Of a DNA stretch of 64,000 bases, positions 1 through 54,572 are shown in pieces (position 1 is the stretch's first letter; each line of letters begins with the position of its first letter). The position numbers and the translations under genes are program-made. This stretch comes from Basidiobolus meristosporus CBS 931.73 (lineage: Eukaryota; Fungi; Basidiobolomycota). Under the pieces are notes generated by a model. That model made no database searches, was not told where the DNA came from, and was given only the letters and a program-made list of their open reading frames with translations. Location of the stretch: positions 1 to 64,000 of the forward strand of contig MCFE01000045.1 in the NCBI GenBank assembly GCA_002104905.1, given 5' to 3'.

Positions 1-627
1 GTGGACTGGCGGTTACCTCCTCATAGATGTTGATGGTTTTGTTTCCATCAACATCTATGTCTGGGGTAAAGTAGGCATCAACATTCTCGTCAAAACTGTT
101 GTTGGCAATGCATGGAAACGTAAAGTACTGTGGATAGGCAGATACGATACGCTCAACTAGACCAAGCGTCTTGAATGAGCCATGAGTTAGAATACGCCTC
201 TGTATCACCTTTATGAAATTAGCCAACCGTGGAAACTTACATCTAGATAGCTAGCTTCTGTAGGGCCAACATTACCCACTCTATTCAGTGGGATTTCAAA
301 GAACTTGTCGTATTGGCTGAGGAGTCCCGCGCTGGTAGAGGATATATTTATCAGTACTTGAAAGCTGCACGTACTTCCAGTTCATTCTGTATTCGATACT
401 ACGCTCGGTTTCGATATTAACTAAACGAACAGAAATGATCAGTAAGCTCTCGTAGTGCTGCTACGAATGAAATGGCTCATACATGTGACTTTGTCTGGGA
501 AATAGTCGGTGGCTGGGTCATAATTCTCTACTGTGAATGATGGATCTACGATGTTCGAGGTGAGTACCTCACAAGAGACAGCAGTAAGGCCGAGGAAAGT
601 AAGAGTGCAAATGCTGAAGCAACGCAT
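1..627 (-). pseudogene. Periplasmic-binding-protein-like (CBA1/BtuF-like) paralog, copy 1; runs off window start; frameshifted
   Basis: Exon 1 627-483 (MRCFSICTLTFLGLTAVSC signal peptide), exon 2 420-241, exon 3 from 169 (TLGLVERIVSAYPQYFTFPCIANN). Exon 2 is 180 nt versus 194 nt in intact copy 3: a 14-nt deletion between two CAGCCA microhomologies near 314-319 shifts the frame. Confidence 0.8.
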
Positions 628-1858
628 GTGTATTGATGTTGGATGTTTCGTGATGCACACTTAAATAATATCTGGCCATTGTACATTCGAACACATTGGC
701 TGATCATCCAAAAATATGGACAAATAGGGCACTAACTATTGTGATCAAATTACTTACACAAGTAGCAAGATATCATCTGGCCATTTACACATTGGAACAC
801 ATTAGTTGATCCACCGGAAACATCCCACTAATTAGGATAGATTCCGTTGATGATGTGATGAAACAAGTTAGATACGTTTCTTTACGAGCCAATTGGGGCT
901 ACAAATCTTGCAAGCACCATTCGTGGATGTCAAATAACCATCTATGGAAAATCAATTCACTGCACCGAGGAACAACTTCCAAAAAGCTGACAGTTAATGA
1001 GATAGATTGGATGAATATCATAGTCATTGCCTTGGGTGAAAACGATTTGTGGTATAGCTTACAGCCTTCATCTAGATAAACGTCTACTTGCATTTCTGAA
1101 CTTATATGTACACTAGCTGTGGCCCTCTGCGACTACTGGGGCTTTTGCTGATATTTATAACGACTCTGGCTCTTTATACCTCAGGAAAGATTACGTACAA
1201 GCCTACCCGTTAGACTTATTTTACTCCCCTCAACTCAAATCATAGTATACCTCAGCTTAGAAGAAAAGCTCTGATAATATGCCTTCCGGTATGACATATG
1301 TGCCATCTCATTAATCCTTCCCCGCTAACTAAGCATCAAGAGGTGCTCCCATCCCAACATAAAGCCTCTTGGTAGATACGGCTGAACCCTAGCAAGTACA
1401 TAATCCGAGAACTAGCAATCCCATTCACACTCTCAATGGTAACCATGACAATGGGTGCAAAATTACATTTCACCATTGGTCCACCTCCTCTCAGCAACAT
1501 TGCTATTAGGTTGACATTCACCGAATCACTCAGACCAGCACAAACGCTATGGATAGGTTACTAAGTGAAATCATGATTACTAGGCTCGAGGACGTTTTGG
1601 GAGATACGGCTGGTACTACAACTGGGACTACCTGTTTGATAAATAAATGAATCAGTAATTTCATATCGCTGTGATACTTGTCCCCAACACGCACACACTA
1701 ATCTAGCTCAGAACTGTGCATAATGACAAGACTTGAATCCAGATCGTGAAATCAATGAGATCGCCATAATGTTACGATATAAAATTATTTATGAGATTGC
1801 CTTCGATTATAACCGGTTACCTACAGTAATAGTTGCTATATTGGTGATGTGTAATGCA

Positions 1859-3297
1859 CTAGCCCAAATAGGCAGCTACAACAGAAGCCAACCCGAAGTA
1901 AACAAGAGCTGAGCTGGGACTGAAAAGGCTAACCCCATCGTTGGTATCAGTCTTGATCTTGGCGTCACACTTGTATGCCACATTTGCAAGTGACGCCTTA
2001 GGATCGATACAAGTGCCTTGCTGCGTACCGTTCAGCTTCTCACTATCGAAAAGGTTACGCATCCAGTGGAAAGTGTAGTTACTCTTGAAGCCAGGGTGGA
2101 CCATATTCACTGTGTCTTGCAGTGCAGCATCAGCCATCACAACGGCATTGAAGAACCAATCGGCATCGCCACTCTTGGTTTGGGTTTTGTCTACGCGGTA
2201 TACTGCCTTGTTGCTGATGAACTTGTATTGTGTGTCAGCCACAGAAAGGTTGTACAGGTGCAGTACCTCATCAACCCTAGGATAGGTAATGTTCAGGTGA
2301 ATGAAACTTGACATATCTACTAAGATGTCTGCATCCTTGATGACTTCTAGGAATTCATTCAATGGATTCCCCAAAGCTGAAATACCATTGTTTTCCTCAA
2401 ACTCTATTATTGATTGTGCGCCACTATCCCGCATCAGATAGTGTAGGTAGTTTGGAGTGTAGAGAACGTATGATACTCCTGAGGTTAAATAATCGGTTAT
2501 ATAGACCCAAGCAATCTTTGGCGTTGTCTTAGCCGTCATCGACTGTACCTCGCTCTTGACGCAGTTATAGTTGCCCTCAATGTCCTGTGTGATCTTGTTG
2601 GCGGTCTTCTCCAGGTTAAAGAAAACTGAATAAGTCCTGAGCAAATCCGACCTCGTGAGTGGCCTGGACATCGTCAACTCATTGATGTTGATGGTATCGT
2701 TCCTATCAGCATTTACACCTGGGGCAAAGTAGGCTCCAACATTTGCACTTGAACTGTTGTTGGCTATACACGGGGATGTAAAGTATTGTGGTTCGACAGA
2801 TACGATACGTTCACCTAGGCCAAGCATCTAGAATAAGCATATGTCAGAAATTGCTACCAAGTCGATGTTATCAAATGAGCCATCAATGGTAACTCACATC
2901 TAAAAAGCTAGCCGCAGTCGAATTTGCAATGCTCACTCGATTCACGGGATTTCAAAGAACTTGTCATACTTGCTGACACGTTCCGGCTGAGGAGTCCCAC
3001 GCTGGTAGAGGATGTACCTGTTAGTCTGTGAAAGCTGCACATACTTCCAATTCATTCTGTATTCGATACGGCTCTCTGTTTCATTATTGACTAAGCGAAC
3101 GGAATGCATTAGTAAGCCATCTTAGTGTGAATACAAATGAAGTGGCTCGTACATGTGACTTTGTCTGGGAAATAGTCGGTGGCTGGGTCATAGCTCCCTA
3201 TCTTGGCTGAGGGATCTACGATGTTCGAGGTGAGTACCTCACAAGAGACAGCCGTAAGGCCAAGAAAAGTAAGAGTGCAAATGCTGAAGCAACGCAT
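1859..3297 (-). CDS. Periplasmic-binding-protein-like paralog, copy 2, with signal peptide and C-terminal GPI-type hydrophobic tail; one 1-nt frameshift in exon 2
   Basis: Exons 3297-3153, 3090-2898, 2827-1859 with GT..AG introns. Motifs YILYQRGTPQP, PLTRSDLLRTYSVFFNLEKTAN, PKIAW, DWFFNAVVMADAALQD resemble Fe/B12 substrate-binding proteins. Exon 2 is 193 nt (one base short, in a C run near 2945): a real frameshift or a sequencing error. Confidence 0.75.
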
Positions 3298-4939
3298 GTG
3301 TATTGATGTTGGATGTTTTGTGCTGCACATTTAAATAATAACTGGCCATTGTACAATCGAATACCTTGGCTGCTTATCCAGAGCCATCGCGCAAAGTAGG
3401 ATAGATCACACCAACTATTGTGCTCAAGTTAGTTACACAAGATCATTTACCACGAGGCATGGAACGCTTTGTATGTAACAATGTTGCTTCCATTCCTTAT
3501 CAGTGATGTTGTAGCAATTACATCACTATCACTGGTGAATACCAAACAATCTCAATATGGTAGATTGGTGCTTGGCATCGCTTTTCCAAATAATGGGTAA
3601 TTGGTTGGTCAGATTAAACAATATTCCAGTGTATAGTCACAGACAAAATATCCTGTGGAGACAGTATATTTGACCACCATTTTTGGTTCTACTCTACTGT
3701 TCACTTGCCGACAATTACCATTTCAAGTTCTTTATATCCAATTGTACTGATAGTATGCGTCGGCAATCTGATAATGTACAGGCGATGAGTGAGCAAATTC
3801 AAATCATTCATCATACCCTAAATGTAGAGGAAACTGAGTGCACCTACTGTGATGTTGTATTTATAAAAATTCAGGAAGAGAACTGTAGTTTGTGTAAATC
3901 CCCTTTTCGTTTCACATGGCTGCTGAAAAGAATGCAGTCATATCAACTGAATTCAACTGGGTGCCAAGAACTTCCCTATATTCGGCTTCGTGATATATAA
4001 GCTGTGTATAACAAATATCTGAATCCCTAGTCTGATCATATGCTCATCAAAAAGACAGGATCGTGTGATAAAACGCTGGTATATTGAATAGAAAACAACG
4101 AATTCATCGGAATACCGTCACTCGTCTTTACACCAGAGAATTGCCTGATGCAGATTAGCTCGCTAGGGATCATATACCGTTTTCATTAAACTGACTAGGC
4201 TTACCAAATCATATGATATATTCTAGTGCTATTACAAAAGTTTGTTCTGCTTTAAGCTAATGCCTCAGAACTCGAACTGGAATATGATCAGCCAACTAGC
4301 AAGCCCATTCCCTCTTCTACTAGCCACACTGGTCATGGGCGCTCAGCTGCAGTCTACCGCTGGCCCAGTCTCCTTCAGAAAGGTGGCCCTTCAGCGAGTC
4401 CCTTAGCCCAGCACAGAATCGTAATGATGGATATACCATCCGGGAGTTCAAGTCAAACAAGAAGGAAGACGCATCAAGGATCATGAGCCTTATTCTCCAG
4501 CAGATGACGAACAGCATGCAAAAGAAGGAGTATACCCCACTCTCGAACATGCTTGACATAGATGAGGCGAAGACTGGTACCGCCTCCGATCCGAAGGATC
4601 CCACTCTAGGCAGCAAAGGTGGAGATGAAGGTGAGGGTATTTCTGAGATGAACCCCGAGGAAGCTGAGCTTTGGGGCAATTATGGTCGCTGGAGACGTGA
4701 ATACTGGGAGATATGGTGGGTGTAGTCGGTGGGGAGGCAGAAGATATGGCGGGTGCTATGACTGGGACTGCTGATTTCATAAATAAATGAACCAGTCATT
4801 TCACTACACACTTGTGATGTTCCTTTCATCATGCTGGCAGTGCGGCATCCATACATCCACACATATCTATCTCGGATCAAAGAACAAAGACGATTCTCGA
4901 AATGAAATCATGAAATGTTGTTAGATTACCTTTGACATA

Positions 4940-5135
4940 TAGGTTAGATACAGTAATAGCCTGTACAGAGGCTGAGTTTGTATTGCAAAGCCAAGACCAT
5001 CACTGGTATTTATGCATCCAGTGGAAAATAGAATCACCTCGACGCCGCAGCTCCCACAACTAATCTTACTGTTATTGTGAGTACGCCACGCTATTTGAAT
5101 GTCAGGCTTAGTACTGGCGGTAATTGTCTGGTGTA
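4940..5135 (-). pseudogene. Heavily deleted remnant of a further PBP-like copy
   Basis: Fragments ITASTKPDIQIAW (cf. MTAKTTPKIAW), FHWM (catccagtggaaa shared with other copies) and INTSDGLGF (cf. TDTNDGVS), followed by the same 3' flank as the other copies. Confidence 0.6.
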
Positions 5136-5888
5136 TTACTTCTCCATATATTCGTCGCAGCAACAATACAATCCAAAGCTTTTTCGCAGGTCATGGTCTA
5201 TCAGATGCGTGAACAACACTGAGATATGAATATTCAATCCATCAAACCCCCGTCAATCTTTGCTACAGACCCAATTATATTCCAAATATCTCTACTTGAT
5301 TAAGGGTAGCTCATTGCCTTTGTCATGAGGGCCAATGCCGTGGAACCTGACCTGCGATAAGATCAGCCAACTAGCAATCCCACTCAACCTCCTTGGCCAC
5401 GGGTATTTCACTGCACTCCATAACTGACCAAGACACTCGAAAAGATATAGGCACCGAACCTGTATCTACCGATTCATTTAGTCCTACACAAAACCCCGAG
5501 GACGGATATATCCTCCGGGAGTCCCAGTTAAGCAAGATATGTCGAGGATCATGAACCTTACTTACCATCAAATGACTCAAAGCATGCAGAAGGAATTTAT
5601 AAATAGGAGAACTGATGATATCTCTGCTTCCAAGTATCCAACCATATACCACAAAAGCGACTCGAAGAATCCCAAGTAAACTGAATCATGAAGTTATTTG
5701 TTACTTTCTAAATAATTCGGCATTATGGTTGATCGTTTGATGGATACAGTGAGGTTAGATACAGTAGCAGGCACTATGGTGAATACATAAATTACACTAT
5801 TTCAGACAGGTAGCTGCAAGAGAAGCCAGCCCGAAGTAAGCAACAGTCGAACATAGATTAAAAAACCAATCCCATTGTTAGTAATTAT

Positions 5889-7232
5889 CTAGATCCTGGC
5901 ATCACATTTGTAGGCCACGTTTGCAAGTGGCGCCTTGGGATCAATACAAGTGCTGTGCTTCGGACCATCGAGCTTCTCATCGTCGAAAAGGCTACGCATC
6001 CAGTGGAAAGTGTAGTTACTCTTGAAGTCATGGTGAGCCATATTCACTGTGTCTTGCAGAGCAGCATCAGCCATCACAACTGCATTGAAGTACCAATCGA
6101 CATCACCGCCCTTGGTTTGTATTCTATCTACACGGTATACTGCCTTGTTGCTGATGAACTTATATTGTGTGTCAGCCACGGACAGGTTGTATAGTTGCAA
6201 TACCTCATCAACCGTAGGGTAGGTAATGTTCTGGTGAATGAAATCTGATATTTCCACTACAATGTCTGCGTCCTTGATGACATCTAGGAACTCATTCAAA
6301 TTTTTATATCCGTGAGCCAAAGCGCCGTTATCTTCGTCAAACTCTATTAATTGTGCGCCACTATCCTGCATCAGAGAGCCCAAGTAGCTCGTTGTGGAGT
6401 AAACGTAGTACACATCCGAGCCGTGATATTTGTAATAATCGGATCTATAGATCCAAGCAATCTTTGGCATTGTCTTGGCCTTCATCGACCCTACCTCGCT
6501 CTTAACGCAGTTATAGTTGTCCTCGATCTCCCGTGTGATCTTATTGGCGGTCTTCTCCAGGTTGAAGAAGACAGAATAAATTTTGAGTAAATCTGATCTC
6601 ACAAGTGGACTGTACCACGGATCCTCAGTAATGTGGATGGTTTTGTTCCCAACGATATATCTGTCTGGGGAAAAAAGTGCATCAACGTTTACCCCTGAAT
6701 TACTATTGGCAATGCACGGGGATGTGAGGTATTGTGGTTCGGCAGACACGATACGCTCACCTAGGCCTAGCATCTATGATAACCATGTGTCAGGAAATGC
6801 TTCTAAATCATTCGTATTAGTAAGAACTCACATCAAGATAGCTAACCGCAGTCGAGTTCACAACTTCCACTCGATTCAGCGGGATTTCAAAGAACTCGTC
6901 GTATTGGCTGATTCGCTCTGGTTGAGGAGTCCCACGCTGGTAGAGGATATACTTGTGAATACTTGAAAGCTGCACATACTTCCAGTTCATTCTGTATTCG
7001 ATACGGCTCTTTGTTGCATTGTTAACTAAATGGACGGAATGCATTAGTAGGTTATCTCAGTGTGAATACAAATGACGTGACTTGTACATGTGACTTTGTC
7101 TGGGAAATAGTCGGTGGCTGGGTCGTAATTCTCCACCCTGAAGGATGGATCTACGATGTTCGAGGTGAGTACCTCACAAGAGACAGCAGTAAGGCCGAGG
7201 AAAGTAAGAGTGCAAATGCTGAAGCAACGCAT
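5889..7232 (-). CDS. Periplasmic-binding-protein-like paralog, copy 3; intact 407-aa ORF lacking the C-terminal anchor tail
   Basis: Exons 7232-7088 (145 nt), 7025-6832 (194 nt), 6773-5889 (885 nt) total 1224 nt in frame. An AAG>TAG stop follows CDARI; the decayed tail is still readable at about 5790-5888. Confidence 0.85.
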
Positions 7233-7276
7233 GTGTATTGATGTTGGATGCTTCGTGCTGCACATTTAAATGCAAT

Positions 7277-7340
7277 CTGATCATTGTACATTCGAACACA
7301 TTGGCTGATCATTGTACATTCGAACACATTGGCTGATCAT
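7277..7340. repeat. 28-bp tandem duplication in the copy 3 promoter
   Basis: ctgatcattgtacattcgaacacattgg x2 plus ctgatcat. The motif cattgtacattcgaacacattggctgatc also occurs upstream of copy 1. Confidence 0.9.
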
Positions 7341-7755
7341 CCAGAACTATCGCAGAAATTAGGATAGATTGCACCAACTGTTGCGCCCCAATTAGTTACA
7401 CGAGATCATTTATCGCGAGGAAAAGAACACTCATATGTAACACTGTTGCTTCCACTCCCAACTTCATGATATCTCAGCCATATAGAGTGTCAGACCTGGC
7501 ATTGACGGTAAAAATACTTAGACTTGTAAGGTAGAAGGTATAGCGGGCTTCATAAACAAATGAACCAACAATTATTTCATAGCTATACATCCACATATAT
7601 CTATGCCGGACCAGTGAGCAAAGACAATGCTTGAGGAGAAGTTCGAAATTGTAGGGATGAACTACAATGATATTGCATTCAACTATTTATTAGATAACTT
7701 GAGACTAAAATAGCTTGATGCTGTGATAGACAGTATAGTGAAGACGCGTAATACC

Positions 7756-8202
7756 ATAGCCCAGATAGATGGCTACAATAGAAGCTGAAAACGAGTAAAC
7801 AAGAGCCGACCTTGAGTTGAAAAAGCCAACTCCATCATTAGTATCACACTTATAAACCAAGAAGCTGAAGTGGTACCATATTGCATTGAGAAGGCCGAGG
7901 AGTGCCGCGCTGATAAAAGATTCAAGTCTAATAGAAAAGCTGTAGATACTTCCAGCTCTTTTGGTAATAAATACGATTCTCCATTCGGGCGTCAACTAAA
8001 TGAATGGAATGGATCAGTAAGCTCACTTAGCGTTGCTACGAATTAAGTGACTCATACATGTGACTTTGTCTGGGAAATTGTTGGAGGCTGAGTCGTAAAG
8101 CTCTATCTTGAATGCTGGATCTACAATGTTGGAGGTGAGTTTCTTACAAGAAACGGTAGTAAGGCCGAGGAAAGGCAGAATGTAGGTGCATAAGCACCGT
8201 AT
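7756..8202 (-). pseudogene. PBP-like copy 4: start codon lost (ATG>ATA), exon 2 degenerate, nearly all of exon 3 deleted
   Basis: Exon-1 homolog IRCLCTYILPFLGLTTVSC...FPDKVT, a decayed exon 2, then a jump to YKCDTNDGVGFFNSRSALVYSFSASIVAIYLG. Confidence 0.8.
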
Positions 8203-9106
8203 GTGTACTGATGTTGTATGTAGTATGTTGAACACTTACATAACATCATAGCCTTCAAACACATTAGCTGATCCACAAGAAACGTCGGACAATTTAGACA
8301 TCAACTGCTGTGATCAAATGAGCTACATGAGTTTCTTTAACTATAGGCTAAGATCATATGCAAGTGACACTGTTGTTTGTTTTCCTTATCAGTGGTGTTA
8401 CGATCTCCAAATCAATACTACTGTTGGATAACAATCTCTATATGGTAGATCCGTACTTGACATTACTCTCTCAAATGAAAGAAATTTTGCTGGTCAGATA
8501 GAATGATATTATAGTGTGTAGTCGGATGCACCGTCCAGGAGCTCAAGTCAAGCAAGAAGGAAGACGCGTAACGAACCATGAGCCTTATTTACCACCAAAC
8601 GACAAGCAGCATGTACCAGAAGGAGTATTCTCCACTCTCAAACATACTTGACATTTAAAAGACAAGAGCTCATTCAGTCCTCGATACAGGGATACCACCA
8701 TCGACGACAAAAGTTGAGCGGAGGATAAGGGCAATTTTAAGGAAACATTACTAAGTGGGGAAGATACGGTCGCTGGAGACATGGTTACTAGGTTTGAGGA
8801 CGCCACGGGATATATACCAACTATGCTCGGTGGGAAGGTCGAGGGTATGGCAGGTTCAAAGACTGCTAGTTTGATAAGTGAACAAGCCAGTAATTCGGTA
8901 TAATCACTGTGATACTCTTTCGAACATGCTAGCAATACACTCACACAACACCAACTTAGAGTTGTGAATAATGACAAGACTTGAAGCCAGATCATGAAAT
9001 CAATGAGATCGACATAATGTTATGACTTACAATTATTTATTAGACTGCCTTCGATTATAATAGGTTACTGACAGTAATGGTAGACGTATTGATGATGTGT
9101 AATGCA

Positions 9107-10090
9107 CTAGCCCAAATAGGCAGCTACAACAGAAGCCAACCCGAAGTAAACAAGAGCTGAGCTTGGACTGAAAAAGCTGACCCCATCGTTAGTATCAGTC
9201 TTGATCTTGGCATCACACTTGTAGGCTACATTTGCGAGTGGTGCCTTGGGATCAGTACAAGTGCTTTGCTGCGTGCCATTAAGCTTTTCATCATCGAAGA
9301 GGTTACGCATCCAGTGGAAAGTGTAGTTACTCTTGAAGCCAGGGTGGACCATATTCACTGTGTCCTGCAGTGCAGCATCAGCCATCACAACGGCATTGAA
9401 GAACCAATCGGCATCGCCACTCTTGGTTTGGGTTCTGTCTACGCGGTATACTGCCTTGTTGCTGATGAACTTGTATTGTGTGTCAGCCACAGACAAGTTG
9501 TACAGTTGCAGTACCTCATCAACGGTAGGGTAGGTGATATTTTGGTAAATGAAACTTGACATCTCCACTATGATGTCTGCATCCTTGATGACTTCAAGGA
9601 ACTCATTTAATGAATATCCGAATGCTGTAATACTATAATTTTCCTCGAATTCCATCATTAGTTGAGCGCCACTATCCTTCGTCAAAGAGTATAAGTAGTT
9701 CGGAGTGTAGTAGACGTAGGATATGTTCGAGGAGAAGGTGTAGGCATCGGTTGTGTAGACCCAAGCAATCTTTGGCGTTGTCTTAGCCGTCATCGATTTT
9801 ACCTCGCTCTTGACGCAGTTGTAGTTGCCTTCAATGTCCTGTGTGATCTTGTTGGCAGTCTTTTCCAGGTTGAAGAAGACCGAATAAACTTTGAGTAGAT
9901 CTGATCTCATAACTGGAGTGTACCACGTATACTCAACAAGGTTGATGGTTTTGTTTCCATCGGCATATATGGATGGGGAAAAGAGTGCATCAACATTTGC
10001 ACTCGAACTGTTGTTGGCAATGCACGGGGATGTAAAGGATTGATTGCACATACTTCCAGTTCATTCTGTATTCGATACGACTCTCAGTTT
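9107..10090 (-). pseudogene. PBP-like copy 5: exon 3 almost intact with GPI-type tail, but 5'-truncated
   Basis: 314-aa ORF close to copy 2. Upstream, the start of exon 2 (ETESRIEYRMNWKYVQ) is fused out of frame to exon 3 near 10045. Exon 1 and the signal peptide are absent. Confidence 0.75.
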
Positions 10091-11533: not shown

Positions 11534-12547
11534 ATGAAGGTGATTCAGCAAATAAGCGCTGGGACAAACTCCGACCTAGAAGAAGCGAATGCTCCCAAGC
11601 CAGTTCCAACTGGTGCCGATATCTTGATTCGCAACCTGGCCGTCTCGGTAAATCCTGTTGACAACTTGGCCCGTTCTGGAGAGCTCAATCATCAATTCCC
11701 CTTGGTACTCGGGTGGGATGGAGCTGGCATTGTAGAAGCAGTTGGTGACAAGGTGCAACAGTATAAAGTTGGGGATGAGGTTATGTACGCTGGTTCTATT
11801 GCTCGTCCAGGTTCCAATTCGGAGTATACATTAGTTGATGAAAGAATTGTTGGTAGAAAGCCAAAAACACTTTCGTTTACCGAAGCTGCAGGGCTTCCTT
11901 TGACAGCCATCACCGCCTGGGAAGCACTCGTTGAGCAGCTTTTGATTCCTATCCCTACTGATACTGGAGTCAAAACCCCCAAATCTCTCCTGATTATCAA
12001 TGGAGCAGGTGGGGTTGGTTCGATTGCCACGCAGATAGCATCCAAGGTTTTGAAACTGAAGAACATCATCGCCACCGCGTCACGTCCAGAAACCGCGGAA
12101 TGGTGTGAAAAGATGGGGGCCACACACGTCATAAATCACCGTGAGGATCTCAAACCTCAGCTTGACTCGCTTGGGTTAACGGTGGATTACATGTTCATCT
12201 GCCATTCATCCCAAAAATACCTACCCATGGCCCAAAACATCGTCAGCCCCTTTGGACGGATTGTAAGTATTGTGAAGGATTTGGAGACCCTACCATTCAA
12301 CAACATGATCAGATCTTTGTCGTTTTCCTGGGAAAACATGTTCACCAAAAGCGTCCTCAACCACAATATGTCTTCGCAATCAGCAATATTGAATCAAGTG
12401 GCTGACTTGATAGATGCTGGGGTTATGATACCCACTGTCACCGAAACGACTGAATTCTCGTTGGACGAACTTCGGACAGCTCTGAAGAGAATCGAGGCCG
12501 GCTCTGTGATAGGAAAGATCACCTTGGACATGAAGAGCTGGCCGTAA
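11534..12547 (+). CDS. MDR-superfamily zinc-type alcohol dehydrogenase-like / quinone oxidoreductase; intronless
   Basis: 337 aa; AVSVNPVD, LGWDGAGIV, AAGLPLTAITAWEAL, LLIINGAGGVGSIATQ, SFSWENMF. Confidence 0.93.
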   Translation: MKVIQQISAGTNSDLEEANAPKPVPTGADILIRNLAVSVNPVDNLARSGELNHQFPLVLGWDGAGIVEAVGDKVQQYKVGDEVMYAGSIARPGSNSEYTLVDERIVGRKPKTLSFTEAAGLPLTAITAWEALVEQLLIPIPTDTGVKTPKSLLIINGAGGVGSIATQIASKVLKLKNIIATASRPETAEWCEKMGATHVINHREDLKPQLDSLGLTVDYMFICHSSQKYLPMAQNIVSPFGRIVSIVKDLETLPFNNMIRSLSFSWENMFTKSVLNHNMSSQSAILNQVADLIDAGVMIPTVTETTEFSLDELRTALKRIEAGSVIGKITLDMKSWP

Positions 12548-12594: not shown

Positions 12595-13744
12595 CTCGAC
12601 ATATGTGTAAATCCAATGTAAATAAAGTAATATTTACACGTACGAAACACTGGAAACTCTCTAGGTTTGGTGTGAGTTATACACAACTGTAGAGATCTGA
12701 TCATTAGAGACCAAAACAAGCAGTCGTTGCATAGTTGAGAATTGTAACTGTATTCACATGAACTTGGTCACTTGGAGGGAGACAGCTACCAACAGGTGAT
12801 ATCACTATTTCAATTGAACCAAAGAAGCCACAACCACTACTGTAGTTTCCTAAATAAAATATTAAGGCTAAAGCAAGGATAATCCATCAGTGCTCAGTAC
12901 ACTGTTGAGGGGCTAGGAGGAAGAAGTGGCAAGAATGAGATAGCAATTGAGTTTGTAGCTTGTGGGTCACGTGGAGAAAGTGTTGCTGAAGCCTATAGCA
13001 CTGAGGGCAACTCGTATCCACCTTTTGGCGTGGTGTATATTCTGTTGTATGGTGTTCCTTTTGAGAAGATTACCTTAGATAGAGCCCTTGAATGTATGCT
13101 TTAAGCTGAATCCAGTCACGTACCACACTACTGGCCAATACAATTACATTCGAAACGTGAAGCATCACTGTATGATTGTCGCAGCCAATTGACACCCATC
13201 CCTATCTCGATCATCAGCAGACTTCAACTTATTGCGGTACCTTCCTCACCGCCAATTATCAAAGGTATTGGCCATAAAGCGAAATGCTTTGATTTGGTCT
13301 AGATCGTCGATTCAACTGACAACCACACAGGTTTATATATTCAGATAATGGCCATCACGTAGGGTAAGGCACCTTAACATGCACTCCTAAAGTTCGGTAA
13401 GATAAGTGAAATATATCATGAATATCTTGGCCCGAAGCCACCAAATTGCTAGAAATACTGTTGTTTGAAATCGGTGCTGCTAGCTGGATCATTGCCTTTT
13501 TGGTAGTATATCTTTGCGGTACTAATTTTAGTAATAAGCCCATCTCCTTATATCGTTAATCAGTGACTGTACTCCGTTATAAACACCAATCATTAGGGAA
13601 TCGCGAAATATTCTATCAATGCTTACCAAACTATGTATTACTAATCAGTACCAGGTTCTATTTCATTCCAAGGATGTGTGATGAGTTTATATATGAACCG
13701 TACTTGCTTCAATGACTCATTACACAAAGTTTCTTTCATTCACA

Positions 13745-14797
13745 ATGCTCAGCTCTACAGATACTCAGTTTGACTGCTATGCCTGCCACGGCAAGGACGA
13801 AGCGTTGAAACCATGGGCTTACAAACCACGTCCCCTTGGTGAGGACGATGTTGAAATAGCCATTTCTCACTGCGGAATATGTGGTTCCGACATCCACACA
13901 CTTGATTCAGGATGGGGAGCAACTAAGTACCCAGTGGTTGTAGGCCATGAAATCGTTGGAAAAATTGTTGACAAGGGCCCTAGAGTTTCAGGTCTAGAGA
14001 TTGGCGACAGAGTAGGTGTAGGACCACAAGTGTTTGCTTGCTTGAAGTCGGATTGTAAGGCTTGCAGTTCCGGAAATGACGCTACGTGCCCAAATAAGGT
14101 TGGAGCTTACAACAGCAAGTACGCCGATGGTTCCAAATCCTATGGAGGGTATTCAAAGGGAATCAGAGTTCTTTCACACTACGCCTTCAAAATTCCCGAA
14201 GTTATTGACTCTGCCGAGGCTGCCCCTATTCTATGCGCAGGTGTTACCGTCTTCACCCCGATGAGGAGATATGGCGTAAAGGCCGGAGATCGCGTTGGCG
14301 TAGTTGGAATTGGCGGGCTTGGACATTTGGCTCTACAATACGCCAAAGCCTTGGGTGCTGAAGTAACTGCCATTTCCACTTCCACAAACAAAAAATCTGA
14401 AGCTCAACAATTAGGCGCGTCCCATTTCGTCAATTTGAGAGATGAAGAAGACATGAAGAAGGCATCTCGCTCTCTAGATTATTTGTTTATCACATCCAAT
14501 GCCTCTGATGCTCCATACGACCAATACGCCAGCTTACTGGATACATTTGGTAAAATGGTTTTGCTCGCTGCACCTGAAGACATCATCAAGATTCGTCCTT
14601 TCAGTTTGATTCCCAGGAATATCACACTCGTAGGTAGCATCATTGGCTCTATTGAGGATCAAAAGGCAACCTTGGAGTTCTCTGCCAAACATAACATCCG
14701 CCCTATGATCGAGAAGCTCCCTATGAGTAAAGTCAACGAGGGCCTAAAGCATGTCCGTGACGGCAAAGTTCGTTACAGAGTTGTGCTTGAAAATTAG
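13745..14797 (+). CDS. NADP-dependent (cinnamyl-type) alcohol dehydrogenase, ADH6/AdhC-like; intronless
   Basis: CGICGSD, GHEIVG, structural-zinc cysteines, ILCAGVTVFTP, GIGGLGH, VRYRVVL. Likely start MLSSTDTQ at 13745; an in-frame ATG also exists at 13712. Confidence 0.95.
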   Translation: MLSSTDTQFDCYACHGKDEALKPWAYKPRPLGEDDVEIAISHCGICGSDIHTLDSGWGATKYPVVVGHEIVGKIVDKGPRVSGLEIGDRVGVGPQVFACLKSDCKACSSGNDATCPNKVGAYNSKYADGSKSYGGYSKGIRVLSHYAFKIPEVIDSAEAAPILCAGVTVFTPMRRYGVKAGDRVGVVGIGGLGHLALQYAKALGAEVTAISTSTNKKSEAQQLGASHFVNLRDEEDMKKASRSLDYLFITSNASDAPYDQYASLLDTFGKMVLLAAPEDIIKIRPFSLIPRNITLVGSIIGSIEDQKATLEFSAKHNIRPMIEKLPMSKVNEGLKHVRDGKVRYRVVLEN

Positions 14798-27329: not shown

Positions 27330-28495
27330 TCAGGCCCAACGGCCGATCAGCGCCATGATCCCTGCCCCGGTCCATAGCGCAATGTAACAAGTGACCTTCA
27401 TTAGTTTGCTTTGCTTGATGAACTCTGGGCTGTTCTGAAACTCGACCGCTATCAGGTTCACAAAGGCCATGTAGATGAGAATGCCAGCACTGACGGCGTC
27501 GAAGATTCCGTTGACTAGTAGGGCGGTGGGGGAGTTTTCGTTGTAGCTACTGTGTATTCCCAGACCAATGGCTACTCCGATCGGAGTGATGACTGCGTAG
27601 AACATGGCTGTGATATAAGGGACCAATCGATTCGAGTACGTAAGCTCACCAATACGTGCCCCAAGTGCCAGCCCTTCGAAGAATTGGTGAAATACGATGG
27701 CACACAACAATGAATTGAACTCAGTGCCTGAAGTCACTCCGACTGAAATTCCAATCAACACGGAGTGCATGGAGATGCCAAATTCCAGTAAATACGTGGA
27801 GATTCTACGTTGTTGATCAGCATCTATCAGACCCCCATGGTGGCATCCACCATGGCCACTCTCGAGATTGTGTGTCTTCTCCAGGACGCCACTGGGCTCT
27901 CTCTCGACACTCAACGTGTCTTCACTGTTGGAGTCTACGGAGTCCGAGGTTTGCGCCTTGCCGAAATGCTGGCTAGCGGTAAACTCGATCAATTGAAGAA
28001 TCAGTGCGCCGAACATAGCAAACAGCCCGGCGTAGGCGGTGTAATTTTCATGGAAAGCCTCTGGAACACAAGGGTTGGTGAGCGCAAACAATGCACCAGG
28101 GAACATATGTATGAACCCTGTGGCCAGAATCACCCCTGTGCCGAAGTGCTTCCCAAGCGTTACAAAGTTGCGTCCCTTTGAAATATGTTTGAAGCGAGAT
28201 GCCAAGAGGGAGGAGAAGACCCCCAATGCACTGGCAATCAAGATAATGAATATGGCGGCAACATGCAAGGGCATGTTATAATTTCCTGCATCGCCTGCGC
28301 TGCAGCCATCCGATTCATGTTCATGCTCATGACTGGGACCTGTCGGGACATAAAAATCAGTAAAGGTGGGCTCCGAGCATGACGTAAGTGCACATTACCT
28401 GCATGTTTGGGTACGATGGTGACTTCTTGAGAAGATACAGGAGCGACGCTAAAGAAGATCAACGAAAGTATGGGCAGTAATGATGTTTTCGGCAT
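27330..28495 (-). CDS. ZIP (Zrt/Irt) zinc/iron transporter with signal peptide and His-rich N-terminus
   Basis: Exon 1 MPKTSLLPILSLIFFSVAPVSS..., intron 28398-28340, then PSHEHEHESDGC; FGTGVILATGFIHM, LEFGISMHSVLIG, FHQFFEGLALG. Confidence 0.95.
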
Positions 28496-47187: not shown

Positions 47188-49445
47188 CTACTGATCAATC
47201 TCAAGATCAGGGATTTCGGTTTGCTTATAGTTGGCAGAGAGGATGGGTCGGATGACGGACTCGAAGTAGGGCACTGGTTGCTGAGGGTTATTGGCCTTGA
47301 CGAGGTTGAAGTAGGCCTCGTAGATGTTTCCATCGTATCTGCCCAGAGGGGAGTTGATGATGTAATCGGTGTAGTTGAAGGAGTCGACCAGTGGGATGGC
47401 GTCCTTACGGATCACCGAGCACAGATGGTTGACTTGCTCACGAATGACCGAAAGCTGGGATGCGGTGAAGTACTCACAGCTGAGGAACTCCCCGGCATTT
47501 TGCTTGATGCTGTGGAGACCGTAGAGTAGGCAGAGGTTGGTCAGCACGGTACGAATGCTCTCAGGCGCTTGGCGTACGGCATCCGCGAAGCGATTGAAGA
47601 TGTAGCCATAGCTGTGCATACGGGCGGCATGCAGACGCTCAACTGCGCAGCTCTCCAAGGCGGCATCTTTACTGATTCCCTTGGCCTTGGCTGCCTCGTA
47701 AATGTCGGCCGAGATCTTGACTGCATTGGCAGCAACTACACTCCATGCCTCAGAGATGGTATCCAGGTTGGCGATGGATGCGACATCATCGCCTGGACAT
47801 TTCAAGGCGCTCAACTGTCCAGCGTTCTTGAGGTAGCTGAATCCTTTGGAGACATTCTTTCCTCGCTTGATATCAAGGTATGCGGTGATCAGGGAACGGC
47901 CGGTTTGAAGGGTCAGGATGGTGTTGTCCCCTTCCCAGGTGCATTGAATGGCGAAATCGGAATACATTGATGCCAATCCAGTGTATCCAGAGTACCCGTG
48001 GCCACCACACGCTTGGCGACACTGCTCAATGGCGCTCAGACAGTTCCATGTACAGAACGCCTTGAGTCCAGCGGTGGTAGCGTGGGTCTCCTTGAGGAGC
48101 TCGATGGTTTCAGAGAGATCTTGGCCCGGGCGGGCATTCTCTAACTGATCCATCAATTGGTTGTACAGCTTTTGGACCTCAGAGCTGGTGAAGTTCACGG
48201 CCACTGCCTCGGCCAACAGAGGCAGCAGTCGATTCTGGTGGATCACATAATCCAAGATCTTGGTCTCCGGCTGCTTAGGGTTGGAAGAGAACTGGCGACG
48301 GACTGCAGCATATCTCAGCGCAATGGTGAGGGCTTTCTTGGCGTAGTTTGCACTATCCCGGACCATGGAGACTCTGCCACCAATGAGCGCGCCGTAGGCA
48401 AGCTGAGCGAGTGGGGGCTGGATGACCTTACCAGTGCGGGTGACCTGTGCGTACTTCATCAACATGTTTTGTCGAGGAATGCGGACGTGTGTGAACTGGA
48501 TCCAACCGTTGTCAATACCATCTCGACCCATTTTCTTGCCAATATCTCCGATGTTGATGCCTGGCAGCAGGTTGAATGTTTTGGGATCGCGAAGAGGGAC
48601 TACGAATGGTTTGACACCGTAGTTCTTGCCCTTCACGATCAACTGAGCGAAGGCGGTTGTGTGAGTTGCTGTATGGGCCGCACCACCAATCCACCATTTG
48701 GTGGCGGTGACGGTGGGCGTATGAACGATGAACTCGTCGGTAGCTTCATCGAAAGTGGCGGTGGTCTCAAGTCCAGCCACATTAGATCCATGTCCGAGCT
48801 CGGTCATGGCAAAGCAGCCGGTAACTCCGTTCAAGGCCAGAGCCCCCCTCTTGACCCAATATTCATATTGGGCAGGGGTGGCTTGGCCCTGGATTGTGCT
48901 GAAGAATAGGCCAGTGTGGACACCAAGTCTGGTGTAAAAAGCGGGGTCAACCAATCCCATGAGAATCATTCGTTTGTGGAAGGACTCCTTGGATTCATTG
49001 GCCAAATAAGGAAGAACGTTTCGGAGTTTCAGCAATGTGCGCTCTCTCACTTCCGGAAGGGTCAAGTTGTAATGATCATCCATTCTCCATAGTGGGTCTC
49101 TTTCCAGTTGAAACATGAATTTCTCGGTCAGCTAATGGGTGAAAGCCGGAGTATTAGGCTTCGTTCATGGTACAGGAAACAACTGCTGGGACAAACCTTG
49201 GTCTCCTCTTCGCCACCGTCCAAATAGTAGGTTAGCTCGCGTATGGGGAAGGAGGGGTTCGCACGCTCCTCAGCGAGGCTTTCGGTAGGTCTAAAGTGAA
49301 TCCATTGGTTAGTACGAACACTCGATAGTACCCCTTGATTTGTGGCTTACTTAGGTGGTTGACTCTTATTTACAGTGGAGGTCTGCTTTTTAGGCTCCAA
49401 ATGGGCCTTGATAGAAGCAAGACGGGTATCGGTATTTGGAGTCAT
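47188..49445 (-). CDS. POX1: Peroxisomal acyl-CoA oxidase, copy 1
   Basis: CFAMTELGHGSN, KWWIGG, KMGRDGIDNG, CRQACGGHGY, TWEGDN; two short 5' exons from MTPNTDTRLASIKAH. Confidence 0.95.
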
Positions 49446-52307: not shown

Positions 52308-54572
52308 CTACTGATCAATCTCAAGATCAGGGATTTCGGTTTGCTTATAGTTGGCAGAGAGGATGGGTCGGATGACGGACTCGAAGTAGGGCACTGGTTG
52401 CTGAGGGTTATTGGCCTTGACGAGGTTGAAGTAGGCCTCGTAGATGTTTCCATCGTATCTGCCCAGAGGGGAGTTGATGATGTAATCGGTGTAGTTGAAG
52501 GAGTCGACCAGTGGGATGGCATCCTTGCGGATCACCGAGCACAGATGGTTGACTTGCTCACGAATGACCGAAAGCTGGGATGCGGTGAAGTACTCACAGC
52601 TGAGGAACTCCCCGGCATTTTGCTTGATGCTGTGGAGACCGTAGAGTAGGCAGAGGTTGGTCAGCACGGTACGAATGCTCTCAGGCGCTTGGCGTACGGC
52701 ATCCGCGAAGCGATTGAAGATGTAGCCATAGCTGTGCATACGGGCGGCATGCAGACGCTCAACTGCGCAGCTCTCCAAGGCGGCATCTTTGCTGATTCCC
52801 TTGGCCTTGGCTGCCTCGTAAATGTCGGCCGAGATCTTGACTGCATTGGCAGCAACTACACTCCATGCCTCAGAGATGGTATCCAGGTTGGCGATGGATG
52901 CGACATCATCGCCTGGACATTTCAAGGCGCTCAACTGTCCAGCGTTCTTGAGGTAGCTGAATCCTTTGGAGACGTTCTTTCCTCGCTTGATATCAAGGTA
53001 TGCGGTGATCAGGGAACGGCCGGTTTGAAGGGTCAGGATGGTGTTGTCCCCTTCCCAGGTGCATTGAATGGCGAAATCGGAATACATTGATGCCAATCCA
53101 GTGTATCCAGAGTACCCGTGACCACCACACGCTTGGCGACACTGCTCAATGGCGCTCAGACAGTTCCATGTACAGAACGCCTTGAGTCCAGCGGTGGTAG
53201 CGTGGGTCTCCTTGAGGAGCTCGATGGTTTCAGAGAGATCTTGGCCCGGGCGGGCATTCTCTAACTGATCCATCAATTGGTTGTACAGCTTTTGGACCTC
53301 AGAGCTGGTGAAGTTCACGGCCACTGCCTCGGCCAACAGAGGCAGCAGTCGATTCTGGTGGATCACATAATCCAAGATCTTGGTCTCCGGCTGCTTAGGG
53401 TTGGAGGAGAACTGGCGACGGACTGCAGCATATCTCAGCGCAATGGTGAGGGCTTTCTTGGCGAAATTGGCGCTGTCTCGGACCATGGAGACTCTGCCAC
53501 CAATGAGCGCACCGTAGGCAAGCTGGGCGAGTGGGGGCTGGATGACCTTACCAGTGCGGGTGACCTGTGCGTACTTCATCAACATGTTTTGTCGAGGAAT
53601 GCGAACGTGTGTGAACTGGATCCAACCGTTGTCAATACCATCTCGACCCATCTTCTTGCCAATATCCCCGATGTTGATGCCTGGCAGCAGGTTGAATGTT
53701 TTGGGATCGCGAAGAGGGACTACGAATGGTTTGACGCCGTAGTTCTTGCCCTTCACGATCAACTGAGCGAAGGCGGTTGTGTGAGTTGCTGTATGGGCCG
53801 CACCACCAATCCACCATTTGGTGGCGGTGACGGTGGGCGTATGAACGATGAACTCGTCGGTAGCTTCATCGAAAGTGGCGGTGGTCTCAAGTCCAGCCAC
53901 GTTAGATCCATGCCCGAGCTCGGTCATGGCAAAGCAGCCGGTAACTCCGTTCAAGGCCAGAGCCCCCCTCTTGACCCAGTATTCATATTGGGCGGGAGTG
54001 GCCTGCCCTTGGATGGTGCTGAAGAACAAGCTAATGTGAACGGCGAGCCTAGTATTAAAGGCGGGATCAACCAAACCCATCAAAACAAACCGCTTTTGGA
54101 AAGACTCCATCGACTCATTGGCCAAATAAGGAAGAACGTTTCGAAGTTTCAGCAATGTGCGTTCTCTCACTTCTGGAAGGGACAGGTTGTAGTGACCATC
54201 CATTCTCCATAGTGGGTCTCTTTCCAGTTGAAACATGAACTTCTCCATCAGCTAATGCCAGGTGGGAAGGGATTAGGCTTCGCTTATGGAACAAGTAAAG
54301 ATTAGTCTGGTGCTCGAACAAACCTTGGTCTCCTCCTCGCCGCCGTCCAAGTAGTAGGTTAATTCCCGCACTGGGAAGGAGGGATTGGCACGCTCAGCAG
54401 CGATGCTTTCGGTGGGTCTACAGAGAAGTCGTTGGTTAGCGCCAATACTCCCAAGTGTTCTTCCGCTGTTAGGTTACCTGGGTGGTTGCTGAGTGTTTAC
54501 ATTGGAGGTGTGCTTCTTGGGCCCGATGTGGGCCTTGATTGAGGCAAGACGGGCGTCGGTATTTGGGTTCAT
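52308..54572 (-). CDS. POX1: Peroxisomal acyl-CoA oxidase, copy 2
   Basis: Same motifs as copy 1; 5' exons from MNPNTDARLASIKAH; offset 5120 bp from copy 1. Confidence 0.95.

What the first reader, a model, noticed from the sequence alone, without database searches (positions are those of the whole stretch)
1..10090. Tandem array of six CBA1/BtuF-like binding-protein genes in a fungus, in birth-and-death
Seen: six related copies on the minus strand with the same 3-exon layout, each followed by the same 3' flank. One is intact, one is a single base from intact, and four are broken by different lesions. Knowledge: the motifs YxLYQRGTP, PLxR....FFNxExxAN, PKxAW and DWF..AV..D..L.D..HP match the Fe-siderophore/cobalamin periplasmic-binding fold, which includes algal cobalamin acquisition protein CBA1. 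Inference: a lineage-specific expansion of cell-surface B12 or metal-chelate scavengers, working without a bacterial ABC permease (none is in this window).
Basis: partly seen in the sequence, partly recalled or inferred. Interest (0 to 1): 0.8.

Follow-up and report, generated by a model that had tools for sequence, protein, structure and literature searches.

The report
Fungal CBA1-like binding-protein gene array
The fungus Basidiobolus meristosporus carries a decaying tandem cluster of expressed genes for secreted, probably surface-anchored relatives of the algal vitamin-B12 uptake protein CBA1; the family was already known in early fungi, and its ligand in fungi is untested.

Summary
The window is the first 64 kb of Basidiobolus meristosporus contig MCFE01000045.1. 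Positions 1-10090 hold five, not six, minus-strand copies of one 3-exon gene, plus an orphan 3'-flank pair.
- A: 14-nt deletion, cut by the contig end.
- B: one base from intact.
- C: open, but a stop removes the C-terminal hydrophobic tail.
- D: gutted relic.
- E: 5'-truncated at about 10090.

Two other versions of the array, 97-99% identical, lie on contigs 530 and 1028. They carry intact copies and different small lesions.

The proteins belong to the eukaryotic CBA1 family. All 16 conserved positions published for CBA1 line up: 12 identical, 3 conservative, and one pocket Glu replaced by Phe. A confident AlphaFold model (pLDDT 89) matches siderophore/haem/B12-type periplasmic binding proteins at Z 17-18. 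On the tree the copies are a Basidiobolus-specific expansion inside zygomycete fungi, so they were not acquired from bacteria. Exon 3 dN/dS is 0.22-0.32. RNA-derived contigs show that C and B are spliced and expressed.

The genome has B12-dependent enzymes, so corrinoid capture is the best guess. Iron-chelate binding remains open. Fungal CBA1 homologues were already reported in 2023. The scan also noted other CBA1/BtuF-like genes elsewhere in this genome.

The parts
1..627 (-). Copy A: exon 1 (ATG at 627), intron 1, exon 2 with a 14-nt frameshifting deletion near 315, intron 2, and the start of exon 3. It is cut by the start of the contig.
   Evidence: The contig start equals window position 1.
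1336..1858 (-). 3' flank of copy B. It shares repeat elements with the flanks of E and C and with the orphan flank.
   Evidence: 1685-1984 matches 8933-9232; 1602-1663 matches 4742-4803; 1372-1426 matches 4256-4310 and 5331-5385.
1859..3297 (-). Copy B. Exon 3 is 1859-2827, intron 2 is 2828-2897, exon 2 is 2898-3090 with a 1-nt deletion at about 2945 (codon 98), intron 1 is 3091-3152, exon 1 is 3153-3297. The start codon, both GT..AG introns and the TAG stop are kept. It is transcribed and spliced.
   Evidence: RNA joints 2827>2898 and 3090>exon 1, RNA contigs identical to the window sequence, and both states of the deletion in DNA contigs.
4241..4803 (-). Orphan 3'-flank element with no gene body beside it. 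It is the likely remnant of a sixth repeat unit and is weakly transcribed.
   Evidence: RNA contigs cover 3959-4599.
5331..5592 (-). Partial 3'-flank element downstream of copy C.
5797..7232 (-). Copy C. Exon 1 is 7088-7232, intron 1 is 7026-7087, exon 2 is 6832-7025, intron 2 is 6774-6831, exon 3 is 5889-6773 and ends at a premature stop (codon 405). The decayed remains of the tail codons lie at 5797-5888. It encodes 407 aa without the hydrophobic tail. It has the highest RNA contig depth of the two copies laid (B, C).
   Evidence: RNA joints 6773>6832 (depth 258) and 7025>7088 (depth 267). P0002, from contig 530, differs from it by one residue.
7700..8202 (-). Copy D, a relic. The start codon is ATA, exon 2 is riddled with indels, and most of exon 3 is deleted so that only its extreme 3' end remains.
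   Evidence: The same relic is present on contig 530.
8524..9106 (-). 3' flank of copy E.
9107..10090 (-). Copy E. Exon 3 is open (9107-10051) with the complete hydrophobic tail. Only 46 nt of exon 2 remain (10045-10090), joined straight to exon 3 with the rest of exon 2 and intron 2 missing. Homology ends at 10090, so exon 1 and the promoter are missing.
   Evidence: Full-length counterparts exist on contigs 530 and 1028.

Best explanation
This is a Basidiobolus-specific tandem expansion of the eukaryotic CBA1 (cobalamin acquisition protein 1) family.

Each full gene has three exons and encodes about 435 aa: an N-terminal signal peptide, a two-lobed class-III solute-binding domain with N-glycosylation sequons and four cysteines, and a terminal 16-residue hydrophobic stretch. 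That stretch looks like a GPI-attachment signal or a tail anchor.

The most likely working is as follows. The protein is exported and held on the outer face of the plasma membrane or wall. It captures a scarce bulky chelate between its two lobes. A corrinoid (vitamin B12) made by gut or soil bacteria is the best guess. The ligand would then be passed to an unidentified internalisation step (endocytosis or a transporter), as proposed for algal CBA1.

Copy C has lost the tail and would be released as a soluble binder.

The array is turning over. Some units are old relics (D and the orphan flank). Others carry recent version-specific frameshifts (A, B) or a structural truncation (E).

Shown here: family membership by signature, the fold, vertical fungal descent, purifying selection, and transcription with splicing of B and C.

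Inferred: export and anchoring, the ligand, and the uptake route.
For: - Family: a profile of the copies finds 341 proteins at E<=1e-3. The named ones come from fungi and other eukaryotes. They include the Allomyces (P0107) and Mesostigma (P0055) proteins listed as CBA1 HMM hits by Sayer et al. 2023.
- Signature: all 16 residues that paper gives as conserved in CBA1 map to conserved columns of my alignment. Mesostigma and Chara reproduce them exactly. Copy C has 12 identical, 3 conservative and 1 radical change.
- Fold. Profile against PDB: 5joq at E 2e-4 and IsdE at 0.012. Fourteen of 77 family members hit Peripla_BP_2.
- Descent: all Basidiobolus proteins form one clade (SH-aLRT 98) inside zygomycete fungi. 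The array copies form a clade (99) sister to the paralogue P0004.
- Selection: exon-3 dN/dS is 0.22-0.32 at dS 0.26-0.58.
- Expression: spliced RNA contigs exist for C (depth about 260) and B (about 40-70).
- Export signals: a hydrophobic N-terminus and C-terminus, 8 sequons and 4 Cys in exon 3.
- B12 need: B. meristosporus is listed with MCM 1, MetH 2, class II RNR 5, CblAdo transferase 3, MeaB 1 and CblD 1 (Orlowska et al. 2021, Table S1).
- Function of the family: CBA1 is required for B12 uptake in Chlamydomonas and Phaeodactylum (PMC10828217).
Against: - No binding or uptake data exist for any fungal member.
- The Glu of the conserved W-F-E pocket cluster (CrCBA1 E396) is Phe in the array copies. 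It is lost in all Basidiobolus paralogues examined.
- 22 of 75 family-conserved positions differ in copy C, including the Trp of the RAEW motif and a conserved Cys pair. The ligand may therefore have changed.
- Land plants keep CBA1 homologues without using B12, so family membership does not prove B12 binding.
- The best structural matches are siderophore and haem binders, and BtuF is not among the rows shown.
- In this window no copy is complete.
- The GPI or tail anchor rests on hydropathy only.
- RNA evidence comes from one run held as contigs. It gives no expression level and no growth condition.
Confidence: 0.55

Rival explanations
1. The array proteins bind iron chelates (Fe-siderophores or haem) rather than corrinoids. 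They would serve as surface receptors for xenosiderophores in the iron-poor amphibian or reptile gut.
For: - The top structural matches are catecholate or hydroxamate siderophore and haem binders: CeuE, YiuA, PiaA, FhuD, ShuT, HmuT.
- The profile hits in PDB are Lmo2184 and the haem binder IsdE.
- Basidiobolus has an unusually expanded siderophore NRPS repertoire and measurable siderophore activity (PMC7466969).
- The pocket Glu conserved in CBA1 is lost in this clade.
Against: - The match to siderophore binders is at fold level only, at 8-15% identity. No CeuE-type His/Tyr/Arg iron-siderophore ligands were identified here.
- The only experimentally characterised members of the family act in B12 uptake.
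- Three of the four predicted corrin-pocket aromatic positions are kept.
- Fungi already have dedicated siderophore transporters (own knowledge).
Confidence: 0.25
2. The array in this window is essentially a graveyard. The copies here are pseudogenes or redundant alleles, and function resides in other loci (P0004, P0010/P0152, and the intact copies on contig 530). Copy C would be a transcribed but functionless truncation.
For: - Every copy in the window has a lesion.
- B is transcribed although it is frameshifted, so transcription alone does not prove function.
- The tail region of C has decayed further after the stop, with a 1-nt deletion at codon 413.
Against: - dN/dS of 0.22-0.32 between paralogues shows long purifying selection.
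- C and C' differ by 2 synonymous and 0 non-synonymous changes in exon 3.
- C keeps its start codon, both introns and the whole binding domain. It has the higher RNA contig depth of the two copies laid, B and C.
- Intact F' and B' exist in a 97% identical version of the array.
Confidence: 0.12
3. The genes were acquired from gut bacteria by horizontal transfer. This has been proposed for many Basidiobolus secondary-metabolism genes.
For: - The fold is a bacterial-type periplasmic binding fold.
- Basidiobolus is reported to be rich in horizontally acquired genes.
Against: - The copies have spliceosomal introns.
- They nest inside a fungal clade with Coemansia, Mycoemilia, Calcarisporiella and Mortierella. 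Chytrids, Allomyces, streptophyte algae, Acrasis and a foraminifer lie further out.
- Of the hits whose source was looked up, every named one is a eukaryote.
Confidence: 0.03

Closest known systems
CBA1 (cobalamin acquisition protein 1) of Chlamydomonas reinhardtii and Phaeodactylum tricornutum (Bertrand 2012; Sayer et al. 2023, PMC10828217)
   Same: - Signal peptide, one class-III binding domain, and one C-terminal hydrophobic segment.
- The same 16-position conserved signature, including FFNxE, PxVxW, DWF and D.
- Similar length of about 435-490 aa.
- No adjacent transporter gene.
- The organism has B12-dependent enzymes.
   Different: - The pocket Glu (E396) is replaced by Phe, and the RAEW Trp and a conserved Cys pair are lost.
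- The genes are present as a tandem, partly decayed multicopy array.
- The C-terminal segment lies at the very end and looks like a GPI signal, whereas CrCBA1 is predicted to have a transmembrane helix.
- One expressed copy lacks the tail.
- No functional data exist.
Fungal CBA1 homologues reported by HMM search (Allomyces macrogynus, Spizellomyces punctatus and others; Sayer et al. 2023, supplement)
   Same: They belong to the same family. The Allomyces protein (P0107) is retrieved by the array profile at E 1e-10 and keeps most of the signature.
   Different: The word 'Basidiobolus' does not occur in the supplementary files of that paper that are held as text. The Basidiobolus clade is more divergent and is expanded.
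Bacterial cluster A-II substrate-binding proteins (BtuF, CeuE, FhuD, IsdE, ShuT; Pfam Peripla_BP_2)
   Same: Two alpha/beta lobes joined by a long backbone helix, with a ligand cleft between the lobes. Z is 15-18 over about 230-270 residues.
   Different: - Sequence identity is 8-15%.
- The window copies score below the Pfam threshold (16.6 against 27.5 bits).
- The gene is eukaryotic, with introns.
- It has an extra N-terminal beta region (about residues 26-100) and a Cys-containing C-terminal extension.
- There is no ABC permease partner.

Membership tests
CBA1 family (eukaryotic cobalamin acquisition protein 1) | The 16 conserved residues given by Sayer et al. 2023 (K78 P118 L136 E206 F214 F215 N216 E218 P251 V253 W255 G289 W394 F395 E396 D408, CrCBA1 numbering) | tested here: met
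   All 16 map to conserved columns of alignment A3 with matching spacings. Mesostigma and Chara show the exact string. Copy C (through P0002) reads K P L D F F N E P I W G W Y F D, which is 12 identical, 3 conservative, and E396 changed to F. CrCBA1 itself was not in hand, so the mapping is by motif and spacing.
CBA1 family (eukaryotic cobalamin acquisition protein 1) | Significant sequence relationship to proteins accepted as CBA1 homologues | tested here: met
   The profile of the array copies retrieves Mesostigma P0055 (E 1.4e-16) and Allomyces P0107 (E 1e-10). Strings of both occur in the CBA1-hit list of PMC10828217. The authors' own HMM could not be run.
CBA1 family (eukaryotic cobalamin acquisition protein 1) | BtuF-like class-III periplasmic-binding fold | tested here: met
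   AF2 pLDDT 89.4 and pTM 0.89. Foldseek probability 1.00 and E about 1e-8. VIA Z 16-18. The nearest Atlas models are Mucoromycota, Streptophyta and Zoopagomycota clusters at TM 0.80-0.85.
CBA1 family (eukaryotic cobalamin acquisition protein 1) | N-terminal signal peptide and a single C-terminal hydrophobic anchor | tested here: inconclusive
   Hydropathy shows both features in the intact reference copy B' (contig 530), and the same tail sequence is present in window copies B and E. Copy C lacks the C-terminal segment. No dedicated signal-peptide or GPI predictor was available.
CBA1 family (eukaryotic cobalamin acquisition protein 1) | Required for, or active in, vitamin B12 uptake | not testable with these tools
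   Only context is available: the genome is listed with MetH, MCM and class II RNR.
Pfam Peripla_BP_2 (PF01497) | Score at or above the gathering threshold of 27.5 bits | tested here: not met
   Exon 3 of B scores 16.6 bits at E 0.0055, and the other copies and P0002 give no hit. Fourteen of 77 family members match at E<=0.01, the best at 1e-7. The copies are remote homologues, not members by Pfam's rule.
BtuF / BtuCD-F type ABC importer | A cognate membrane permease and ATPase encoded with, or working with, the binding protein | tested here: not met
   The eight largest ORFs of the window outside the array and the alcohol dehydrogenase genes, scanned against Pfam, showed a methyltransferase, a ZIP transporter, a PUF protein and acyl-CoA oxidases (three gave no hit); alcohol dehydrogenases lie beside the array. 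No ABC component was seen. The rest of the genome was not searched.
GPI-anchored fungal surface proteins | A C-terminal omega site, a spacer and a hydrophobic tail that is cleaved and replaced by GPI | tested here: inconclusive
   The tail ...TNDGVSLFSPSS followed by a 16-residue hydrophobic end fits the pattern. No predictor or experiment was available.

The most novel reading that the evidence does not exclude
The tail-less copy C is a secreted 'corrinophore' and has the highest RNA contig depth of the two copies laid (B, C). It would scavenge a corrinoid, or another bulky chelate, away from the hypha. It would then hand the ligand to the anchored paralogues (B, E and F type) at the surface. 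This would be a eukaryotic counterpart of bacterial haemophore relays, evolved by duplication and loss of the tail within one array.
Probability: 0.1. Interest if true: 0.7.

Novelty: new member of a known kind. Interest (0 to 1): 0.4.

Why it matters
How non-Dikarya fungi take up vitamin B12 is unknown, although they have B12-dependent enzymes. CBA1 homologues are the only named candidates, and none has been tested. Basidiobolus lives in animal guts among B12-producing bacteria. It has expanded this family into an expressed multicopy array with natural anchored and tail-less variants. That gives concrete genes for binding assays and for complementation of algal cba1 mutants. The finding extends a published observation rather than opening a new category.

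Tried and rejected
- Single-sequence phmmer of exon 3 against PDB found nothing.
- AlphaFold with only the close paralogues as alignment failed (pLDDT 29.8). It worked only with the 77-sequence family alignment.
- Word-based homologue searches returned few proteins and no algal CBA1. I therefore never held CrCBA1 or PtCBA1 as sequences, and the link to them goes through the published signature and two shared proteins.
- NCBIfam gave no hit for the fungal proteins.
- The search for a sixth gene body was negative.
- Horizontal transfer from bacteria was considered and rejected on the tree.
- I considered that the single-base lesion of B might be an assembly error. It is rejected, because short-read-derived DNA and RNA contigs carry it. 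The same question stays open for the 1-nt indels on contigs 530 and 1028.
- DNA contigs could not separate the three array versions, because contig assembly keeps one path of near-identical variants.
Exons were searched apart by reference. The database protein P0002, which differs by one residue from window copy C, stood in for the spliced product. Scripts projected exon coordinates internally only to count frame and stop codons.

Full report
**Source.** The ORF at 11534-12544 is encoded letter for letter on NCBI GCA_002104905.1 contig MCFE01000045.1, and window coordinates equal record coordinates. Protein hits name the organism as Basidiobolus meristosporus CBS 931.73. Window position 1 is therefore a contig end. 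That is why the first copy is cut.

**What is in 1-10090.** ORF listing, repeat finding, tblastn and self-blastn show five related gene copies on the minus strand. I aligned each copy exon by exon to an intact reference copy. The reference is B' on contig 530, with exons of 145, 194 and 969 nt, 435 codons and GT..AG introns.
- A (627..1) has a 14-nt deletion in exon 2 and runs off the contig.
- B (3297..1859) is complete except for a 1-nt deletion at codon 98 (about 2945).
- C (7232..5797) is open through 407 codons. A substitution stop at codon 405 of the reference, followed by a 1-nt deletion at codon 413, removes the C-terminal hydrophobic tail.
- D (8202..7700) has ATA for ATG, many indels, and has lost nearly all of exon 3.
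- E has an open exon 3 (10051..9107). Homology ends at 10090, so exon 1, most of exon 2 and the promoter are absent.

A sixth gene body does not exist at any sensitivity I could apply. Between C and B lie two copies of the 3'-flank element with no gene between them (5331-5592 and 4241-4803). These are the likely ghost of a sixth unit. The rest of its description holds.

**Three versions of the array.** P0002 (407 aa) and P0003 map to the end of contig MCFE01000530.1 (L002). P0001 maps to contig MCFE01001028.1 (L003).
- L002 is colinear with window 1-10042 at 91-98% identity (mostly about 97%).
- L003 is 98.5% identical to the window and 99% identical to L002.
- Both other versions continue upstream with a full-length E and an extra copy F, next to a Cg6151-P gene. 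The window instead continues into alcohol dehydrogenase genes.
- Shared by all versions checked: the stop and tail decay of C (all three) and the orphan flank; the D relic is shared with contig 530 (its copy on contig 1028 was not analysed).
- Version-specific lesions: the 1-nt deletion of B (window), a 2-nt deletion in B'' (contig 1028), intact B' and F' (contig 530), a 1-nt deletion in E' (contig 530), four 1-nt indels in E'' (contig 1028), the 14-nt deletion in A (window) and a 1-nt insertion in A' (contig 530).

Scattered 1-nt indels between 99% identical contigs are also what long-read assembly errors look like. I count only the deletion in B as verified.

**Reads.** One look-up found three runs of one study. 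Laid on 1800-7300, run X3 behaves as RNA.
- X3 contigs skip exactly the predicted introns: C intron 2 (6773>6832, depth 258), C intron 1 (7025>7088, depth 267) and B intron 2 (2827>2898, depth 44).
- X3 leaves the stretch upstream of copy B (3272-3823) uncovered.
- X3 contigs match window copy B without a single difference. None of the depth of 65 at position 2944 carries the extra base.
- In the DNA-like runs X1 and X2, about half of the depth carries the extra base.

So C and B are transcribed and correctly spliced, and the frameshift in B is real. Contigs give no expression level and no growth condition.

**What the protein is.** Pfam gives only a sub-threshold Peripla_BP_2 hit for exon 3 of B (16.6 bits).

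An exhaustive HMMER search with a profile of the copies found 341 proteins at E<=1e-3, most of them 430-500 aa. The named ones come from:
- other Basidiobolus paralogues, B. ranarum, Calcarisporiella, Mortierella, Coemansia, Mycoemilia and Umbelopsis;
- chytrids and Allomyces;
- Acrasis, a foraminifer, and the streptophyte algae Mesostigma, Chlorokybus, Chara and Mesotaenium.

The family consensus carries FFNxE, PxVAW and DWFE. Sayer et al. 2023 (PMC10828217) list 16 conserved CBA1 residues. In my alignment these fall on conserved columns with the same spacings. Mesostigma and Chara reproduce the string exactly. Copy C has 12 identical, 3 conservative and one radical change, E396 to F. Two of my hits, Allomyces P0107 and Mesostigma P0055, contain strings of proteins listed as CBA1 hits in that paper's supplement.

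With the 77-sequence alignment, AlphaFold gave pLDDT 89.4 and pTM 0.89.
- Foldseek and VIA-align place the model firmly among class-III binding proteins: CeuE, YiuA, PiaA, FhuD and haem binders, with Z of 16-18 over about 260 residues.
- The family profile reaches PDB entries 5joq and IsdE.
- The ESM Atlas neighbours are Mucoromycota, Streptophyta and Zoopagomycota clusters. After them come bacterial Peripla_BP_2 clusters, one of which is fused to CobD/CbiB.

**Descent and selection.** A maximum-likelihood tree (quick search, SH-aLRT support) puts all Basidiobolus proteins in one clade (98) within zygomycete fungi. The array copies form a clade (99) that is sister to the single-copy paralogue P0004. 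This rejects recent bacterial origin and supports a lineage-specific expansion. Exon-3 dN/dS between paralogues is 0.22-0.32 at dS 0.26-0.58. Between versions, dS is 0.01-0.05.

**Mechanism.** The N-terminus and the last 16 residues are hydrophobic. There are eight N-x-S/T sequons and four exon-3 cysteines that fall on family-conserved columns. I therefore infer export and a GPI or tail anchor. C has lost the tail and would be soluble.

The ligand is not shown. Three points favour a corrinoid.
- The only tested family members act in B12 uptake.
- B. meristosporus is listed with MetH, MCM, five class II RNR genes and B12-handling proteins.
- Three of the four predicted pocket positions are retained.

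Four points argue for caution.
- The conserved Glu is lost.
- 22 of 75 conserved positions differ in copy C.
- Plants keep CBA1 homologues without using B12.
- Basidiobolus invests heavily in iron chelation.

**Novelty.** Fungal CBA1 homologues and the idea of testing them were published in 2023. UniRef already names P0002 with a label beginning 'Periplasmi…', and names its B. ranarum relative P0005 'Periplasmic binding protein' in full. What is new here is the expanded, partly decayed, expressed array with a natural tail-less member, present in three near-identical versions. Other notes of this scan flagged further CBA1/BtuF-like genes elsewhere in this genome.

Noticed in passing
window 1-10042; L002 (MCFE01000530.1, 44049-61688); L003 (MCFE01001028.1, 1301-19641): The assembly holds three colinear versions of this array, 97-99% identical, and two of them end at contig ends. 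The paralogue pair P0010/P0152 is likewise near-identical on two contigs. This suggests unresolved haplotypes of a polyploid or very recent segmental duplication.
   Followed up: partly
window 10090: Array homology stops abruptly inside exon 2 of copy E. The other two versions continue with exon 1, copy F and a Cg6151-P gene, while the window continues into alcohol dehydrogenase genes. This is either a real rearrangement or a mis-join in contig 45. I could not test the junction with reads.
   Followed up: no
window 3959-4599 and 5014-5563; L002 12795-13167 and 1814-2332: The repeated 3'-flank element is weakly transcribed (RNA contig depth 14-40). It carries small annotated genes on the opposite strand (112 and 172 aa, no Pfam hit). 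An odd 75-nt skip with GT..AC ends occurs at 5195>5271.
   Followed up: partly
L003 7104-8539: Copy E'' on the 19.6-kb contig 1028 has four separate 1-nt indels, although it is about 99% identical to E' on contig 530. This pattern is typical of unpolished long-read sequence, so single-base 'pseudogene' calls in this assembly need read support.
   Followed up: no
window 11534-12547 and 13712-14797; 47188-49116 and 52308-54248; 27330-28274: There are tandem pairs of zinc-type alcohol dehydrogenase genes and of acyl-CoA oxidase genes, and a ZIP metal transporter gene 17 kb from the array. Local tandem duplication seems common in this region.
   Followed up: partly
proteins P0006 (1169 aa), P0008 (927 aa), P0009 (1525 aa), P0014, P0020: Some family hits are long proteins with two or three CBA1-like domains in tandem. 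Their organisms were not looked up.
   Followed up: no
alignment A3, P0002 positions 32, 79, 175, 342: The Basidiobolus paralogues mostly lack a Cys pair that is conserved in the rest of the family: YQCGTP is replaced by YQR/H/KGTP in all of them, and the N-terminal Cys is lost in most, though P0007 keeps it. All of them lack the pocket Glu. The array copies and P0004 also lack the Trp of the RAEW motif.
   Followed up: partly
Fold search atlas, row 5: Among the nearest bacterial structural neighbours is a cluster in which the binding domain is fused to the cobalamin-biosynthesis protein CobD/CbiB. This is a weak hint of a corrinoid context.
   Followed up: no
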